Below, one piece after another: positions 347 through 6,195 of a stretch of DNA of 6,195 nucleotides. Below the pieces are notes generated by a model. That model worked only from the letters and a program-made list of their open reading frames with translations. It was not told the origin of the DNA and ran no database searches. The position numbers and the translations under genes were made by a program. How positions within the stretch are numbered: position 1 is the first letter of the stretch; each line of letters opens with the position of its first letter. This DNA is from Salpingoeca rosetta (lineage: Eukaryota > Protista > Choanoflagellata), in contig JAWQFM010000035.1 of the NCBI GenBank assembly GCA_033442325.1, forward strand, positions 269,941 to 276,135, given 5' to 3'.

Positions 347-470
347 GTGTATGGGATTGGGGGAGCACACCACTCCTTCTTTGGGAACACATTGTCACTG
401 CAGCGCACGCAGGCGCCGCCATCCTGTTCACTGGTGAGATCTGCCGTGTGTGTGCTGTCGCCACTCTCAC

Positions 471-516
<46 letters not shown>

Positions 517-536
517 ACACATACACACACACTCTC

Positions 537-596
<60 letters not shown>

Positions 597-828
597 ACTT
601 ACTCACACTCACACTCACACTCACACTCACATGCACATGCACACACACATGCACACACACACACCAGGGGTGCTGTATTTGAAGCTGCGACTGGACTCGC
701 GCACGAGTGCAAAGAGGGAGGAGCAGCAAGCGCTGTTGCGGGACCCTCGAACCGCAGACACAACCGACAACCCCACGTTTCTTGCTTCCTTTGGCACCAT
801 GGCGTCCACAGCAGCAGCATCTTCGTGA
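347..828 (+). CDS. Probable 3' exons of an upstream, unrelated membrane-protein gene (partial)
   Basis: A pyrimidine-rich tract plus CAG acceptor precedes 347. Exon 347-433 ends at a G|GTGAGA donor. The intron 434-667 contains a compound microsatellite and ends in CAG. Exon 668-828 is phase-compatible. Joined: ..VWDWGSTPLLLWEHIVTAAHAGAAILFTG|VLYLKLRLDSRTSAKREEQQALLRDPRTADTTDNPTFLASFGTMASTAAASS*, i.e. a hydrophobic segment, basic residues, then a hydrophilic tail. The TGA at 826-828 overlaps a possible GTGAGT donor at 825, so the 3' end is ambiguous. No family recognised. Confidence 0.45.
474..664. repeat. Compound microsatellite (CA)n-(CT)n-(CACACT)n-(CA/CATG)n
   Basis: Directly visible; lies inside the putative intron 434-667. 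Confidence 0.95.
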
Positions 829-1097: not shown

Positions 1098-1129
1098 GTG
1101 GGAAAAGCCGTGCCGCAAACCAAAACAAA
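1098..1129 (+). promoter_or_regulatory. Candidate conserved upstream element of paralogue 1 (GTGGGAAAA ... GCAAACCAAAACAAA)
   Basis: The same two blocks occur in the same order upstream of paralogue 2, although the surrounding non-coding DNA does not align. Confidence 0.4.
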
Positions 1130-1218
1130 ACAACAACACCACACAACATGCGAGCCATTCTCACACTGTTCGTTCCTGTCTCCTCTCAGCATCTCCCACC
1201 AAGCAAACAACTCCCACC

Positions 1219-2698
1219 ATGATGAAGACGATGCTTGTTGTGGCCATGATGGCCGCTGTGTGCGTGCTGTCGGCCTCCGCTGCGCCCGTGACCATGCACC
1301 TCCACAAGGACCCTGTCACCATGCACCTGCACAACGGTAGATTGCTGCAATGCCGTTGTTGTTGCTGTTGGTCGTTGTTGTCCTTGTTTCTGGCTGTTGT
1401 TTTCTGCTTCTCCTCTTCTTCTTGTTCTGCTTCTCCTCTTCTTCTTGTTCTGCTTCTCTTGTTCTTCTTGTTCTTCTTCTTGTTCTTCTTCTTCTTGTTC
1501 TTCTTGTTGTTGCTTCTGTGTTGTCTGACATGCAAGATCGCTTCTTGTCTTCTGAGCTGTGCGTCCAGTGTGAGCTCACGCGCATAGCTTTGCCTCTCCT
1601 CCACCCTTCTCTAACCCTTTCCAATGGCGCCGTTCGAATCTCAAAACTACAGAGACTGCCCCTCCGCAGCCCAACTGCCCTGGGTGGACCTTGTACAAGC
1701 AGTGCGACTCTCGCTGGGGCGGGTGCGTTCAAGACCTCCGCACCAGTGTTTCAAATGTAGTTTGGCCGGCCTGTGGAACCGATTGCTCTGGCATCGTTTC
1801 ATGCATTGCTGGCTCATCCCTTTGAGCGCGCCTACTTGTGCGCTATAATCCCGCTTCCCTTCTTGCGTGTGTTCGACCATCCATTTTGACAGTGACCGCC
1901 TTGGCACCTCTGGCAACACCATCTGCTCTGCCGGCTGCGCCATGTCCTCTGTGGCCATGCTCCTGCACACCCGTGGTGTCAGCGTCGATCCTGGTTGGTT
2001 GGTGCGTGTGGGTCTACGTGTGTGTGTGTGTCTGTGTCTGTGTCTGTGTCTGTGTGTGTCTGTGTGTGTGTGTGTCCTGCAATTGCGGTGTTCGAGTTTG
2101 TGTGTGAACGACAACGTGCAAATTGACCTTCTCAATCGCCCCTACCCCTCCATCTCTCTTTCGTTCCCATTCAAGGTTCACTGAACAACTGGCTCATCCA
2201 CAACGGCGGTTATGCCAGCGGTGATCTCATGTGAGTTGGCATCTGGCATTGATTTTGACACAACCACCAATGCGTCTGCGTGCGCGTGCGGTGATTACAA
2301 ACGCACACACACATGCACACACACATGCACACACATACACCACACTTGCCTCACTCCTGTGTCGGCGTTTGTATCTTGTATCTCAGCGTGTGGAGTGCTG
2401 TGGACAAGTTTGGCAAGACGAGCTACCAGGGCATTGAGAACCCCTCCATCAACGCCGTCATCAGCGGCCTGCAGTCGGTGCGTGTTTTTGCTTCGAGCTT
2501 CATCAGTGGGAAGGTGAAACATTGTGAAACATGCCGCCGTGTTGTAGCTTGGCACAACAACGACTGCAGGAGACACTCACGTTTGCTTTGATAAACTTGC
2601 TGTGTCCGTCATTCATCCTGGGTTGCTGATTTGTGACAGTGCCACGGCATCATCGCCAACGTCCGCGGCGGCACCCACTGGGTCCTCCTCACGGGTAC

Positions 2699-2780
<82 letters not shown>

Positions 2781-3014
2781 GTCGGTGTCGGTGTCTATGT
2801 CTGTATGCTTGCATTCACAACACCATCTCCAGTACACGCACCCCTCTCCTTTTCCTCCTCCCCCTCCTCTCCACCTCGTTTCTCACCACAATCGCCACCA
2901 ATGCACGCATCTGCAGGCCACGCTGGCGGCAGCACGTTCAAGGTGAACGACCCCGGCTTCTCCACGACCGAGTACAACTTCTCCGACATGCTCCGTTTCG
3001 CTGTCTACCACTGA
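1219..3014 (+). CDS. Secreted C39-like (papain-fold) cysteine peptidase, paralogue 1; 7 exons, 195 aa
   Basis: Exons 1219-1336, 1653-1722, 1893-1993, 2176-2230, 2387-2477, 2640-2694, 2917-3014 (588 nt). All introns are GT-AG with phases 1,2,1,2,0,1, and the exons join into one open frame: MMKTMLVVAMMAAVCVLSASAAPVTMHLHKDPVTMHLHNETAPPQPNCPGWTLYKQCDSRWGGDRLGTSGNTICSAGCAMSSVAMLLHTRGVSVDPGSLNNWLIHNGGYASGDLIVWSAVDKFGKTSYQGIENPSINAVISGLQSCHGIIANVRGGTHWVLLTGHAGGSTFKVNDPGFSTTEYNFSDMLRFAVYH*. Hydrophobic signal peptide ends near ASA|AP. Motifs QxDxxW, GCxxxSxAM (C78, 1936-1938), HWVLLTG (H158, 2676-2678) and VNDP (D175, 2949-2951) fit the Cys-His-Asp triad of C39-like peptidases. The family was assigned by motif recognition, not by a search. 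The exon structure is corroborated by paralogue 2. Confidence 0.9.
1355..1515. repeat. Degenerate (GTT/CTT)n trinucleotide low-complexity tract in intron 1 of paralogue 1
   Basis: Runs of ttcttcttgttc are directly visible. Confidence 0.9.
2018..2076. repeat. (TG)n/(TGTGTC)n microsatellite in intron 3 of paralogue 1
   Basis: Directly visible. Confidence 0.9.
2303..2345. repeat. Interrupted (CA)n in intron 4 of paralogue 1
   Basis: Directly visible. Confidence 0.85.
2703..2780. repeat. (TG)n-(TCTG)n compound microsatellite in intron 6 of paralogue 1
   Basis: Directly visible. Confidence 0.95.
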
Positions 3015-3316
3015 GCGCGCATCGTGCCATTGCAGTCGGCGATGCCCCTTGAGTGCATTGTCATTGCCCTTGCCCCTATGCGTGTTCTTTCCCTTTGCGC
3101 GTTCTTTTCCTTTTCGCGTTGTGTTGTCTTCCTCCCTTCTTCGTCTCTCTCTCTCTCCCTGTTCCTCCTTCCTCCTTCGTCTCACTCTGCAAATACAACC
3201 ACCCGAAGCCAACACAAGCAAGGTGTCTGTGCCGGTGTCGCCCAAAGCCAGCATCATGCCACCCCACACCAAACCAAACCAAACCGCACAATGCGTGAAA
3301 GATGAAAACTTTGCAC

Positions 3317-3343
3317 GTGGGAAAATCGGCAAATCAAAACAAA
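3317..3343 (+). promoter_or_regulatory. Candidate conserved upstream element of paralogue 2 (GTGGGAAAA ... GCAAATCAAAACAAA), overlapping a CACGTG E-box at 3314-3319
   Basis: Matches the block at 1098-1129. Confidence 0.4.
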
Positions 3344-3390
3344 CACTCCTGCGCTGCGTACTGTTCTCTTCTCCAAGAAGCCAAGAACTG

Positions 3391-3420
3391 ATTCATTCAC
3401 AGATTCATTCATTCATTCAT
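3391..3420. repeat. (ATTC)n short tandem repeat upstream of paralogue 2
   Basis: attcattcac...attcattcattcattcat. Confidence 0.8.
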
Positions 3421-3490
3421 CCACTGGCCTTCACATTCACCATTGTCACCGCTCCCTCTTTCTTCCCCTTGAAGCTCAACACCCAACAAG

Positions 3491-4662
3491 ATGAAGGCTG
3501 TCAGCATTGTGCTCATCGCGGTTGCTGTGATGGCTGCGACATGCCTGCTGTCCACTGCTGCCGCTCCCGTCACCATGCACCTGCACAAGCAGGCCGTTCC
3601 CATGCCCATGCATCTCCACAACAGCAACGGTGAGATTGCGCGTGGTAATCCCGTTGCAGTTGGTTTTCACAGTGCCTTCATTCCTTCATTCGCCCGTTCT
3701 TTACCTTCTCTTATGCTTGTCTGATGTGGAAGGACTACCCTCTACTTCATCGCCCCAACTCACCCCTTAATTCACGGCTGCACCCACCGCTTTGTTAACG
3801 CACGCAGCCACGATCGGCCCGCAGCCCAACTGCCCTGGGTGGACCATGTTCAAGCAGTGTGATTCCCGCTGGGGCGGGTACGTGCCAGCACGAGTGAAGG
3901 AGTGAAGCGTTTTGCTCACACCCTGGAATGAACGAAGATGGAGTGTTTGTCGACTGTCACGATTCATACAGCTTTGTCCTGCAACTTTTAAGCGTTGCCT
4001 CGCACAACACTCGGCTTCTCATTCTGGTTGCGTTCTGTTGACAGCGATCGCCTTGGCACGTCTCCAAGTGACACAATCTGCACTGCTGGTTGCGCCATGT
4101 CCTCCGTCGCCATGCTGCTACACACGCGAGGCCTCGGCCTGGATCCTGGTGCGCGTTTTGAACCGTTTGGTCTCAACGTGTCCTCTTTGTTTGCCCAGTA
4201 CTCTGCGTCAGCGTCCTGGCTGCCCTTCACTTCCTCTTCTTGTCCTTCTGTGGCAAAGCACCAGAACAATGAGCGCCTGCCTCTCCATCGTTTGCTCATC
4301 AACAGCCAAATTCGCGCGCGTCTGTGTGCAGGTTCGCTGAACAACTGGCTTATCAACAACGGCGGCTACGAAAGCGGTGACCTCATGTGAGCCAAAATGC
4401 AATTCTGCTTCTGCACCTTCGTCCTTGCTGTGATCTGGATGTCTTCGTCTTCCCTAGCTCCACAGCGCATCACTGCCTTGAAATTTGTTTCTTCCACCAT
4501 TCACATTGTGTCTTGCACTCAGCCTGTGGGGCTCCGTGGACAAGCTTGGCAAGACGAGCTTCCAAGGCCTGGAAAAGCCCGCTCTGAGCGACGTCATCAG
4601 CGGCATTCAGGCGGTGAGGTTTAAGGTCCCATGCAGTTTTGTCTTTCTTGTGTATGTGTGTG

Positions 4663-4698
<36 letters not shown>

Positions 4699-5210
4699 AA
4701 GCGTCAGCCAAACTAGTTATCCTGCGCCTTGCTCTGGTGAGACGCCAAGCACAAGCGAACTTTCTTCCATTGCATATTCGAGCTGCTGTGAGAGATGTGA
4801 CCTTATGACTTCGATTAACCTGCTATTCCTCAGTGCCATGGCATCATCGCTAACGTCCGCGGAGGATCGCACTGGGTCCTTCTCACAGGTGCGTATAGAG
4901 CATGCAAGCATTCGTGCATGCAAGCCTAGCCAACAACAGTTGCGTGCTTGCTTCACGTCTCATCAAGCCGTCATTGTCGACAGCCATGTTGGGCTGTCAA
5001 CCTCAACAGTCATGCACACTCACACTCTGGTACACCCTAATCGTTGTTCTCACACGCACCTATACACTCAATCTACATGGGTTGTGGTTCGGCTTCACCG
5101 CTTGAAATGCAGGCTTTGCCGGTGGAAGCACGTTCAACGTCAACGATCCATACTACTCCACCTCCCAGTACACCTATGCGGACATGCTTCGCTTGGCCGT
5201 GTACCACTGA
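3491..5210 (+). CDS. Secreted C39-like (papain-fold) cysteine peptidase, paralogue 2; 7 exons, 203 aa
   Basis: Exons 3491-3629, 3808-3877, 4045-4148, 4332-4386, 4523-4613, 4834-4888, 5113-5210 (612 nt), with GT-AG introns in the same positions and phases as copy 1. Protein: MKAVSIVLIAVAVMAATCLLSTAAAPVTMHLHKQAVPMPMHLHNSNATIGPQPNCPGWTMFKQCDSRWGGDRLGTSPSDTICTAGCAMSSVAMLLHTRGLGLDPGSLNNWLINNGGYESGDLILWGSVDKLGKTSFQGLEKPALSDVISGIQACHGIIANVRGGSHWVLLTGFAGGSTFNVNDPYYSTSQYTYADMLRLAVYH*. Putative triad C86 (4091-4093), H166 (4870-4872), D183 (5145-5147). Confidence 0.9.
4649..4696. repeat. (TG)n microsatellite in intron 5 of paralogue 2
   Basis: Directly visible. Confidence 0.95.
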
Positions 5211-5737
5211 GACTGCAAACGTGCGCAGCGTCAGTCCTGTGGTGCTGTGATGCACCAACTCGTCGTTTTCCCTCACTTGCGCTTTGCCTGTTTCGCGGCG
5301 CAGACCCAGCTTCTTGTGGTGAGTGTTGTTGCTGTCCTTACACTCAGCCTTCTTGTTAAGATGTGCTTACCTTCACACCTGGTCAAAGGACCAAAGAGCA
5401 TTGTTCTGTTCTTTCCCTCCAGTTTCTCTTCCTTGGAGAGTGGCACGACTGTTCTGTTTCTTCTTCTTCTTTCTCGATCCAGATCCAATACATACATACA
5501 ACAACACACCAAGAAGCCACAGCGCAAAGCGAAAAACACACTCAAACGCATCGTCACGACCTTCAATCCTCTGCCGTGGATAGTTCCCGAATGATACCAA
5601 CAAGTAGCGCTCCTCCAAAAACATTGCCGCTGCCGATACTTGTCTGGAATCATACATAGAAACCAAACAAGGCACAACCCCCAAGACAGACAACACACGA
5701 CTTTCCGCTCCTGGCAAAGACAAAGACGAAGAAGACG

Positions 5738-6128
5738 ATGCTGCTGTTGTGGCCGTCATGGCCTGCGCCCTGTCGGCTTCGGCCGCCCCCATCACCATGC
5801 ACCTGCATCAGGAGCCGGTCACCATGCACCTGCACAACGGTCAGTGTTGCAAGTAGTTTTGCTGAATGGTGGTGGTGGTGTTGTTTCTTTGTTGTTGTTG
5901 TTGGTGGTCAGTGGTCAGTGCAATGTGCATCTTCACTCCCCGTGCTTGTGGTTTGTGGTTCACCTTGAATCCGCATGCACTCGTCGCTCCATTCACTCAC
6001 ATCCATATCCATTCAAACCACTTGCAGAGACTGCTCCTCCTGCCCCCAACTGCCCAGGCTGGTCCATGTTCAAGCAGTGCGACTCCCGCTGGGGCAGGTG
6101 TGTGTGTGTTGATGGGGAGGGGGGATTG

Positions 6129-6192
<64 letters not shown>

Positions 6193-6195
6193 TGT
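5738..6195 (+). CDS. C39-like peptidase paralogue 3, 5' part only (runs off the window); N-terminus frameshifted, so possibly a pseudogene or a signal-less variant
   Basis: Exon 1 ends at 5839 (donor GTCAGT at 5840). Exon 2 is 6028-6097 (70 nt, same as in copies 1 and 2), followed by a GT donor at 6098. In frame from ATG 5758: MACALSASAAPITMHLHQEPVTMHLHN|ETAPPAPNCPGWSMFKQCDSRWG. The ATG at 5738, homologous to Met5 of copy 1, is out of frame with this. Confidence 0.8.
6098..6195. repeat. (TG)n microsatellite at the start of intron 2 of paralogue 3
   Basis: Directly visible; begins at the splice donor. Confidence 0.95.

What the first reader, a model, noticed from the sequence alone, without database searches (positions are those of the whole stretch)
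1219..6195. Hidden tandem array of intron-rich, secreted, bacterial-type C39-like peptidases in a eukaryote: candidate antibacterial or prey-digestion system
Seen: three head-to-tail paralogues that the ORF track does not show. The two complete copies have a signal peptide and an intact Cys/His/Asp motif set; the third is visible only up to exon 2. Knowledge: the QxDxxW...GC..ts.AM...H(W/F)V...G....vnDP signature characterises stand-alone C39-like (Peptidase_C39_2 / PF13529-like) papain-fold domains. These are mainly prokaryotic or phage proteins and are often fused to cell-wall-binding modules. Other bacterial papain-fold wall hydrolases have been domesticated by eukaryotes (NlpC/P60 in Trichomonas; Tae-derived Dae amidases). 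Inference: an anciently acquired, intronised (6 introns) and amplified family that is secreted or phagosome-targeted and acts on bacteria, for example on peptidoglycan stem peptides, in a bacterivorous protist.
Basis: partly seen in the sequence, partly recalled or inferred. Interest (0 to 1): 0.85.

Follow-up and report, generated by a model that had tools for sequence, protein, structure and literature searches.

The report
Secreted C39-like peptidase gene array
The window holds a head-to-tail array of Salpingoeca rosetta genes for small secreted cysteine hydrolases of a bacterial type; their nearest relatives are fused to cell-wall-binding or cell-wall-cutting modules, so they probably help this bacteria-eating protist break down bacterial walls, but that role is untested.

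Summary
The window is Salpingoeca rosetta, G000:C35:269941-276135. It carries two complete 7-exon genes and the first two exons of a third, all on the + strand. My spliced copy 1 is identical to the database protein PTSG_10707. Copy 2 is PTSG_10708. So the genes are hidden only from a prokaryotic ORF track.

Both complete copies pass Pfam's own threshold for Peptidase_C39_2 (PF13529). They fold with confidence into a papain-like domain closest to C39 peptidases. Q56, C78, H158 and D175 are invariant across eukaryotic and bacterial relatives.

The family is a protist-wide clade, not a choanoflagellate oddity: seven choanoflagellates, chrysophytes, Phalansterium and a foraminifer. It is nested among bacterial sequences (Tumebacillus and other Bacilli). 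Close relatives are fused to a GH25 lysozyme, SH3b, LysM, SpoIID, glucosaminidase or muramidase. That supports a peptidoglycan substrate by association only.

A published table shows low, colony-enriched PTSG_10708 expression.

Verdict: a new, uncharacterised member of a known family. The scan also noted a double-domain paralogue elsewhere in this genome.

The parts
1219..3014 (+). Copy 1 (PTSG_10707), 7 exons and 6 GT-AG introns, 195 aa. Exons 1219-1336, 1653-1722, 1893-1993, 2176-2230, 2387-2477, 2640-2694, 2917-3014.
   Evidence: Spliced and translated. The product is 100% identical to P0001. PF13529 E 4.8e-7, above the cut-off.
1219..1281 (+). Signal peptide of copy 1, residues 1-21, ending S-A-S-A before A-P.
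   Evidence: 12-residue hydropathy mean 3.0. The model has a helix at residues 3-17. No signal-peptide predictor was available.
1282..1336 (+). Low-confidence linker or prosegment with two PVTMHLH repeats. It continues into exon 2 with the N-E-T sequon (N39).
   Evidence: pLDDT under 50 for residues 24-30. Choanoflagellate orthologues keep T-x-[HR]-L-[HA]-like repeats and an N-x-S/T sequon before the first cysteine.
1700..1702 (+). Codon of Q56, the predicted oxyanion-hole glutamine.
   Evidence: Invariant in A1 and A2. Coordinates.
1936..1938 (+). Codon of C78, the predicted nucleophile, in the motif G-C-A-M-S-S.
   Evidence: Invariant. It aligns with the G-C of 3ERV. It is the first residue of helix 78-89.
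2676..2678 (+). Codon of H158 (motif H-W-V-L-L-T).
   Evidence: Invariant. It aligns with the H of 3ERV. It is the first residue of strand 158-167.
2949..2951 (+). Codon of D175 (motif V-N-D-P).
   Evidence: Invariant D-P. It aligns with the D-P of 3ERV. It directly follows strand 170-174.
3491..5210 (+). Copy 2 (PTSG_10708), 7 exons, 203 aa in my model. Exons 3491-3629, 3808-3877, 4045-4148, 4332-4386, 4523-4613, 4834-4888, 5113-5210. Catalytic codons: Q63 3855-3857, C86 4091-4093, H166 4870-4872, D183 5145-5147.
   Evidence: PF13529 E 2.1e-6. dN/dS against copy 1 is 0.15-0.18 and dS about 0.8. Listed as expressed in Fairclough 2013, Additional file 10.
5738..6097 (+). Copy 3, partial. Exon 1 runs to 5839 and exon 2 is 6028-6097. 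The start region is damaged: ATG 5738 is out of frame, and the in-frame ATG 5758 leaves no signal peptide. The rest is lost in a run of N.
   Evidence: alignment with copy 1: +2 nt, -6 nt. (no later exons found anywhere). (N run at C35:276136-280729).
1148..1222 (+). Short upstream ORF (24 codons) whose TGA overlaps the ATG of copy 1 (A-T-G-A).
   Evidence: Translation. Whether it lies within the transcript is unknown.

Best explanation
This is a tandem array of Salpingoeca rosetta genes: PTSG_10707, PTSG_10708 and a damaged or incomplete third copy. Each complete gene encodes a signal peptide, a short flexible His-rich prosegment with an N-glycosylation sequon, and one stand-alone Peptidase_C39_2 (PF13529) papain-fold domain. 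The domain carries a Gln/Cys/His/Asp catalytic set.

Shown:
- the gene structures;
- family membership;
- the fold;
- conservation of the catalytic residues;
- purifying selection on both copies;
- membership of a protist-wide clade nested among bacterial sequences.

Inferred:
- The proteins enter the secretory pathway and reach the medium or the food vacuole.
- C78 attacks an amide bond of peptidoglycan (stem peptide or cross-bridge) in captured or surrounding bacteria. They would then work as the peptidase half of an endolysin-like digestion or defence kit.
- The ancestral gene came from a bacterium of the Bacillota kind, then gained introns and was duplicated in the S. rosetta lineage.
For: Gene models and identity to PTSG_10707.

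PF13529 above the gathering score.

Structure: the AlphaFold model has pLDDT above 93 for residues 50-195. The best fold matches are C39 domains 6mpz (Z 12.4) and PCAT1 (12.3), the pseudomurein endoisopeptidase PeiR (12.0), staphopain (11.6) and the C39-like 3ERV (11.4). A mixed eukaryote-bacterium profile finds 3ERV at E 3e-6 with G-C, H and D-P aligned.

Catalytic residues: Q56, C78, H158 and D175 are invariant in 40 eukaryote-type sequences and in 21 mixed sequences.

Selection: dN/dS is 0.15-0.18.

Secretory route: hydrophobic N-terminus; a conserved sequon and clade-specific cysteine pairs.

Peptidoglycan link, all from relatives:
- P0139 is 60% identical, lies inside the eukaryotic clade, and is a GH25 lysozyme fusion.
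- 7 of 20 close multi-domain relatives carry SH3b.
- GTDB relatives carry LysM, SpoIID, glucosaminidase, or muramidase plus SH3.
- Structural neighbours include phage GH25+C39_2+SH3 proteins and LysM+PG_binding+GH19 proteins.
- Peptidase_C39_2 is listed as a catalytic domain of endolysins of phages of Gram-positive hosts (PMC8223927). Mycobacteriophage LysA domain N5 matches 3ERV (PMC3314691).

Distribution: every eukaryote named as a holder is a phagotroph as far as I know.

Bacterial affinity.
Against: - No activity, localisation or substrate is known for any member of the eukaryotic clade.
- The S. rosetta proteins have no wall-binding module.
- No PHROGs or NCBIfam family matches them.
- As far as I know, no bond specificity has been shown for any PF13529 domain.
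- The closest solved folds include peptidases with quite different substrates: double-glycine leaders, Ufm1, glutathione.
- Published expression of PTSG_10708 is low (about 4 units) and enriched in colonies rather than tied to feeding. PTSG_10707 does not appear in that table.
- I could not measure the triad geometry, because model coordinates are not exposed.
Confidence: 0.5

Rival explanations
1. A secreted or lysosomal cysteine protease that acts on proteins rather than on peptidoglycan. It could digest prey proteins in general, or process or remodel the cell's own extracellular matrix or theca.
For: The papain fold is above all a protease fold, and staphopain, streptopain and cathepsins are all among the matches. 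There is no wall-binding module. PTSG_10708 is enriched in rosette colonies, which depend on secreted matrix. Some relatives carry adhesion-type domains (PKD, TIG, PA14, CARDB, cohesin/dockerin) rather than wall-binding ones.
Against: The most frequent fusion partners of the closest relatives are wall-binding or wall-cutting modules: SH3b, GH25, LysM, SpoIID, glucosaminidase and muramidase. The clade is found in unrelated bacterivores that share no matrix biology.
Confidence: 0.27
2. A papain-fold enzyme with non-peptidase chemistry, such as acyl transfer or glycoside cleavage, as reported for some C39-related proteins.
For: BtrH_N and phytochelatin-synthase-like proteins are close in fold or classification. 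A 2026 paper reports glycosidase activity for an archaeal C39-like protein (PMC13642728, listed; I read the abstract only).
Against: The full Gln/Cys/His/Asp set typical of peptidases is invariant. There is no sequence match to those families for the S. rosetta proteins.
Confidence: 0.08
3. A canonical C39-type leader peptidase that removes double-glycine leaders from exported peptides.
For: The best structural matches are PCAT and ComA peptidase domains.
Against: PF03412 did not match at E up to 1. There is no ABC transporter fusion. The protein is a stand-alone secreted eukaryotic product with disulfide-type cysteines. The review read separates single-domain C39_2 from transporter-linked C39.
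Confidence: 0.03
4. Bacterial contamination or an assembly artefact rather than real choanoflagellate genes.
For: S. rosetta cultures contain prey bacteria. The window is bounded by runs of N on both sides.
Against: There are six GT-AG introns per gene with conserved phases. The window lies on a 748-kb contig of the genome. Orthologues are present in transcriptomes of six other choanoflagellates and branch in a sensible order. Several independent sequencing studies of the organism hold the stretch.
Confidence: 0.01

Closest known systems
Stand-alone bacterial C39-like peptidases of PF13529 (solved example: 3ERV from Bacillus anthracis)
   Same: Same Pfam family, above its threshold. Same fold (Z 11.4). 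The G-C, H and D-P motifs align. Both are single-domain secreted proteins.
   Different: Only 14-17% identity to 3ERV. The eukaryotic proteins are shorter in the loops, carry clade-specific cysteine pairs and an N-glycosylation sequon, and are encoded by intron-bearing genes. The function of 3ERV itself is not established.
Tumebacillus stand-alone secreted C39_2 proteins (T. avium, T. lacus, T. lipolyticus)
   Same: 42-48% identity over the whole length. Same layout, a signal peptide plus one domain of about 195 aa. They also lie in tandem, three copies in T. avium.
   Different: They lack the cysteines at positions 48, 57, 74 and 146. They have no introns and sit in an ordinary bacterial gene context. 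They form their own clade (support 100/100) outside the eukaryotic clade. Their function is unknown.
Peptidase_C39_2 catalytic domains of phage endolysins and bacterial lysins (for example mycobacteriophage Bxz2 LysA domain N5; GH25+C39_2+SH3 phage proteins)
   Same: Same Pfam family and fold. A 60%-identical relative inside the eukaryotic clade has the endolysin-like GH25 + C39_2 layout.
   Different: The S. rosetta proteins are single-domain. They match no PHROGs family. Their activity on walls is untested.
C39 peptidase domains of bacteriocin and peptide ABC exporters (PCAT1, ComA, LahT)
   Same: These are the best structural matches (Z 10.8-12.4), with the same order of catalytic residues.
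   Different: There is no PF03412 match and no transporter. The S. rosetta proteins are extracellular products, not cytoplasmic domains.
Eukaryotic antibacterial enzymes of bacterial origin (Dae amidases from Tae effectors; Trichomonas NlpC/P60), cited from my own knowledge
   Same: The concept is the same: a papain-fold wall hydrolase of bacterial ancestry that is now a secreted eukaryotic protein. Nesting among bacterial sequences is shown here.
   Different: A different family (C39_2, not NlpC/P60 or Tae). It is spread over several protist supergroups rather than one lineage. No activity has been shown.

Membership tests
Peptidase_C39_2 (PF13529) | Match to the family profile above Pfam's gathering score | tested here: met
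   30.9 and 28.8 bits against a cut-off of 24, covering profile positions 5-143 of 143.
Peptidase_C39_2 (PF13529) | Papain-like fold closest to C39 peptidases | tested here: met
   The model has pLDDT 87.8 overall and above 93 in the domain. Foldseek's top hit is 3ERV. VIA-align gives Z 12.4, 12.3 and 11.4 for 6mpz, PCAT1 and 3ERV.
Peptidase_C39_2 (PF13529) | Conserved Gln, Cys, His and Asp in the family's order | tested here: met
   Q56, C78, H158 and D175 are invariant. They align to the corresponding motifs of 3ERV. The Cys opens a helix and the His opens a strand.
Peptidase_C39_2 (PF13529) | Cys, His and Asp within bonding distance in three dimensions | not testable with these tools
   Model coordinates are not exposed. 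Only the secondary-structure positions are consistent with a triad.
Canonical C39 bacteriocin-processing peptidase (PF03412) | Profile match and fusion to an ABC exporter | tested here: not met
   No PF03412 match at E up to 1. The products are stand-alone proteins of 195 and 203 aa.
Peptidoglycan hydrolase / endolysin-type enzyme | Wall-binding or second wall-cutting module in the same protein | tested here: not met
   The S. rosetta proteins have a single domain. The feature is met only in relatives: GH25, SH3b, LysM, SpoIID, glucosaminidase and muramidase.
Peptidoglycan hydrolase / endolysin-type enzyme | Hydrolysis of a peptidoglycan bond | not testable with these tools
   Needs biochemistry.
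Eukaryotic gene of bacterial origin | Eukaryotic sequences nested among bacterial ones in a supported tree | tested here: met
   The eukaryotic clade has support 96/93. It joins Tumebacillus, Bacilli genomes assembled from metagenomes, and an SH3b fusion (92/83). Further bacteria lie outside. The root is taken from the outgroup and is not inferred.
Eukaryotic gene of bacterial origin | True residence in the eukaryotic genome | tested here: met
   Six spliceosomal-type introns per gene. The locus lies on a 748-kb contig. Orthologues occur in six further choanoflagellates.

The most novel reading that the evidence does not exclude
A single clade of secreted C39_2 hydrolases descends from a Bacillota-like wall-associated enzyme. 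It is shared by phagotrophic protists of at least four supergroups: choanoflagellates, chrysophytes, Amoebozoa and Rhizaria, and perhaps ciliates. In these organisms it would serve as a dedicated peptidoglycan peptidase of the food vacuole. Some members have rebuilt an endolysin-like two-enzyme protein by fusion to a GH25 lysozyme. The conserved His-rich T-x-H-L-H repeats of the choanoflagellate proteins would then be a prosegment that keeps the enzyme silent until it reaches the acidic vacuole.
Probability: 0.35. Interest if true: 0.65.

Novelty: new member of a known kind. Interest (0 to 1): 0.5.

Why it matters
How bacterivorous protists take apart bacterial walls is poorly known beyond lysozymes. 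Choanoflagellates are also the closest living relatives of animals and a model for host-bacterium interactions. If these proteins cut peptidoglycan, they would add a peptidase class to the eukaryotic antibacterial repertoire. They would be another case of a bacterial wall enzyme taken over by eukaryotes, this time spread across several supergroups. They would also give S. rosetta, which can be genetically manipulated, a testable handle on prey digestion and on the release of the muropeptide signals that eukaryotes sense. If they are ordinary proteases, the finding is a routine annotation upgrade.

Tried and rejected
No splice junction or expression level could therefore be read directly.
- PDB by sequence. 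The single protein and the eukaryote-only profile A1 gave nothing meaningful. Only the mixed profile A2 reached 3ERV.
- GTDB. The first scan, with the single protein, found nothing. The profile scan worked.
- NCBIfam and PHROGs gave no match for the S. rosetta or Tumebacillus proteins.
- Rfam on 1-2290 gave nothing.
- Papers. Searches for the gene names, for choanoflagellate plus C39, and for C39-like in eukaryotes found no work on this clade.
- Tumebacillus avium gene neighbourhood. It holds LysR, MFS and pyruvate:ferredoxin oxidoreductase genes and says nothing about function.
- The 'Verrucomicrobiaceae' hit L020 is rejected as bacterial evidence. Its gene has two GT-AG inserts of about 35 nt and joins cleanly when they are removed, so the contig is eukaryotic and was binned into the wrong genome.
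- First tree. The long-branch domains of the second S. rosetta locus were attracted to Bacilli, so I rebuilt the tree without them.
- Sequencing-run shares. Small contig sets, which look like transcriptomes, hold 0.13 of 1100-5400 and 0.35-0.38 of 2917-3629. Genome-sized sets hold about 1.0. This fits spliced transcripts. It is weak evidence, because the run type is a guess.


Full report
**What is there**

The 6,195-base window is G000:C35:269941-276135 of Salpingoeca rosetta. By eye and by script I assembled two complete genes on the + strand. Each has seven exons and six GT-AG introns.

Copy 1 (1219-3014) gives a 195-aa product that is identical to the database protein P0001, named PTSG_10707.

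Copy 2 (3491-5210) gives 203 aa. The database model P0002 (PTSG_10708, 207 aa) differs only in using a donor 12 nt further downstream in exon 5. That adds four residues found in none of 39 relatives, so I prefer the shorter model.

Exon lengths (apart from exons 1 and 3) and all intron phases are the same in the two copies. The introns differ in length and align only loosely. Between the copies dS is about 0.8 and dN/dS is 0.15-0.18. This is an old duplication with both copies under purifying selection.

**The third copy**

A third copy starts near 5738 and is visible through exon 2 (6028-6097). The window ends in a (GT)n run that is followed in the genome by 4,594 N. Another 3,695 N precede the window.

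No later exons of copy 3 were found anywhere in the genome. Its remainder is therefore in the unread stretch or is missing, and the true number of copies in the array is unknown.

Relative to copy 1 it carries a 2-nt insertion and a 6-nt deletion in the signal-peptide region. The ATG at 5738 is therefore out of frame, and the only in-frame ATG (5758) leaves no hydrophobic core. It may be a pseudogene, an assembly error, or a gene with another start.

**What the proteins are**

Both complete products match Pfam Peptidase_C39_2 (PF13529) above its gathering score and match nothing else.

An AlphaFold model built on 40 relatives is confident in the domain: block means are above 93 from residue 50 to the end. 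It is poor in residues 22-47.

Foldseek ranks the C39-like peptidase 3ERV first. The exhaustive aligner gives:
- Z 12.4 and 12.3 for the peptidase domains of two peptide exporters;
- Z 12.0 for the pseudomurein endoisopeptidase PeiR;
- Z 11.6 for staphopain;
- Z 11.4 for 3ERV.

A profile that mixes eukaryotic and bacterial members finds 3ERV by sequence at E 3e-6. The G-C, H and D-P motifs are aligned.

Q56, C78, H158 and D175 are invariant in both alignments. In the model C78 opens helix 78-89, H158 opens strand 158-167, and D175 follows strand 170-174. That is the usual papain arrangement. I could not measure distances because coordinates are not given.

The N-terminus is a typical signal peptide by hydropathy. 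All eight choanoflagellate sequences have an N-x-S/T sequon just before the domain. They also share cysteines at positions 48 and 146, which the other eukaryotic subclade replaces with four different cysteines. C57 and C74 are invariant in the eukaryotic set. These features point to passage through the ER. That step is inference.

**Relatives**

The family is large. There are 3,050 cluster representatives at E up to 1e-3 and 721 at 1e-10.

Named eukaryotic holders:
- the choanoflagellates Microstomoeca roanoka, Barroeca monosierra, Hartaetosiga balthica, Salpingoeca infusionum, S. kvevrii and S. helianthica;
- the chrysophytes Pedospumella encystans and Ochromonas danica;
- the amoebozoan Phalansterium solitarium;
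- the foraminifer Globobulimina turgida.

An Atlas cluster points to ciliates as well.

Long metagenome contigs that carry close relatives have eukaryote-type neighbours, for example a PX domain, a mitochondrial ribosomal protein and split ABCF genes. One of these contigs carries three intronless copies in tandem.

S. rosetta has a second locus on contig C4. It encodes a secreted protein with two such domains and one intron. The scan noted this locus separately.

In bacteria the close form is sporadic. Tumebacillus species carry stand-alone secreted proteins of about 195 aa at 42-48% identity, again in tandem. One Anaerolineaceae lineage has it inside 800-aa proteins. More distant forms are scattered: 14 of 151 Anaerolineae genomes sampled.

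**Tree**

I dropped the two long-branch domains of the C4 locus. All 25 eukaryotic rows, plus three unlabelled ones, then form one clade with support 96/93. Inside it, a choanoflagellate-type subclade also holds the foraminifer. A chrysophyte-type subclade (97/95) also holds Phalansterium.

The eukaryotic clade sits in a wider group (support 92/83) with:
- Tumebacillus (support 100/100);
- two Bacilli genomes assembled from metagenomes;
- an SH3b-fused protein;
- a two-domain protein.

Myxococcota, a Rhizobacter and the Anaerolineae lie outside.

With those as outgroup, the eukaryotic clade descends from within bacterial diversity. The tree does not tell when it happened. It also does not tell whether the patchy eukaryotic range comes from loss or from spread between eukaryotes.

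The two S. rosetta copies are sisters (100/92), with Microstomoeca next. The duplication is therefore specific to the S. rosetta lineage.

**Function**

Nothing here tests function directly. The best indirect evidence is the company the domain keeps.
- P0139 is 60% identical and lies inside the eukaryotic clade. It is a secreted GH25 lysozyme followed by this domain.
- Seven of the 20 close multi-domain representatives that I scanned have bacterial SH3 domains in front of it.
- GTDB relatives combine it with LysM, SpoIID, glucosaminidase, or muramidase plus SH3.
- Structural neighbours include phage GH25+C39_2+SH3 proteins and LysM+PG_binding+GH19 proteins.
- The literature treats Peptidase_C39_2 as a catalytic domain of endolysins of phages of Gram-positive hosts (PMC8223927). 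It links a mycobacteriophage LysA domain to 3ERV (PMC3314691).

Other relatives carry adhesion-type domains instead. Two eukaryotic relatives are fused to an ependymin domain. That fits a secretory or lysosomal setting but says nothing about the substrate.

Against the wall-hydrolase reading:
- The S. rosetta proteins have no binding module.
- They match no phage family.
- The one published expression record that I found shows PTSG_10708 at about 4 units in rosette colonies, against 0-0.8 in attached and swimming cells. The log2 ratio is 3.3 with P 1.2e-3 (Fairclough et al. 2013, Additional file 10). That would also suit a role in the colony matrix.

I put the peptidoglycan-peptidase reading at about one half, a protein-directed protease at about one quarter, and other chemistries below one tenth.

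**Novelty**

The genes are annotated, and UniRef labels them as C39-like. Six searches of the held literature found no study of the eukaryotic clade. It is a new, uncharacterised member of a known family with a plausible and testable role. It is not a new kind of system.

**Limits**

I worked beside those places and sent none of their letters to any search tool afterwards. Splice junctions therefore rest on three things: GT-AG rules, identity to the database model, and collinearity with orthologous transcripts.

Noticed in passing
window 1148-1222: A 24-codon upstream ORF whose stop (TGA) overlaps the start codon of copy 1 in an A-T-G-A arrangement. It is relevant only if the transcript starts upstream of 1148.
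   Followed up: partly
window 4614-4625: The database model of PTSG_10708 (P0002, 207 aa) uses a donor 12 nt downstream of the GTGAGG donor. That inserts four residues (V-R-F-K) absent from all 39 aligned relatives. It is probably a mis-called junction or a minor isoform.
   Followed up: partly
window 5738-5760: Copy 3 differs from copy 1 by a 2-nt insertion and a 6-nt deletion in the signal-peptide region, so the conserved ATG is out of frame. It may be a pseudogene or an assembly error.
   Followed up: yes
window 1282-1336, 3563-3629, 5785-5839: The His-rich P-V-T-M-H-L-H repeats after the signal peptide are kept in all three copies. They recur in looser form (T-x-[HR]-L-[HA], up to four times in Hartaetosiga) in the other choanoflagellate orthologues, but not in the chrysophyte-type subclade. 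The model is disordered here. They could be a prosegment, a sorting signal or a metal-binding site.
   Followed up: partly
L018 2322-3925 (G000:C4, minus strand): A second S. rosetta locus encodes a secreted protein with two C39_2 domains in a row. Both keep Cys, His and Asp. One intron is filled with GT repeats. Identity to copy 1 is 35-43%.
   Followed up: partly
L021 3995-6076 (Tumebacillus avium chromosome): Three head-to-tail stand-alone C39_2 genes of about 195 aa in a bacterium, mirroring the eukaryotic tandem arrays. Other Tumebacillus genomes have one to three copies.
   Followed up: partly
L003 5792-8597: A eukaryote-like metagenome contig with three intronless tandem copies of 198 aa each. 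Tandem amplification of this family recurs in unrelated protists.
   Followed up: no
L020 4022-4680: A contig filed under a Verrucomicrobiaceae metagenome-assembled genome carries a family member interrupted by two GT-AG inserts of about 35 nt, and has low ORF density. It is most likely a protist contig binned into the wrong genome.
   Followed up: yes
P0139, P0008, P0021, P0140: Fusions inside or beside the eukaryotic clade. P0139 is GH25 lysozyme + C39_2. P0008 and P0021 are ependymin + C39_2. P0140 is a two-domain protein whose first domain has lost the catalytic Cys (G-A-D in place of G-C-A).
   Followed up: partly
window 470-660, 2000-2080, 2697-2780, 4650-4700, 6100-6195: Long (CA)n, (CT)n and (GT)n microsatellites lie in the upstream region and inside introns. 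The window is bounded on both sides by runs of N, which begin right at such repeats.
   Followed up: no
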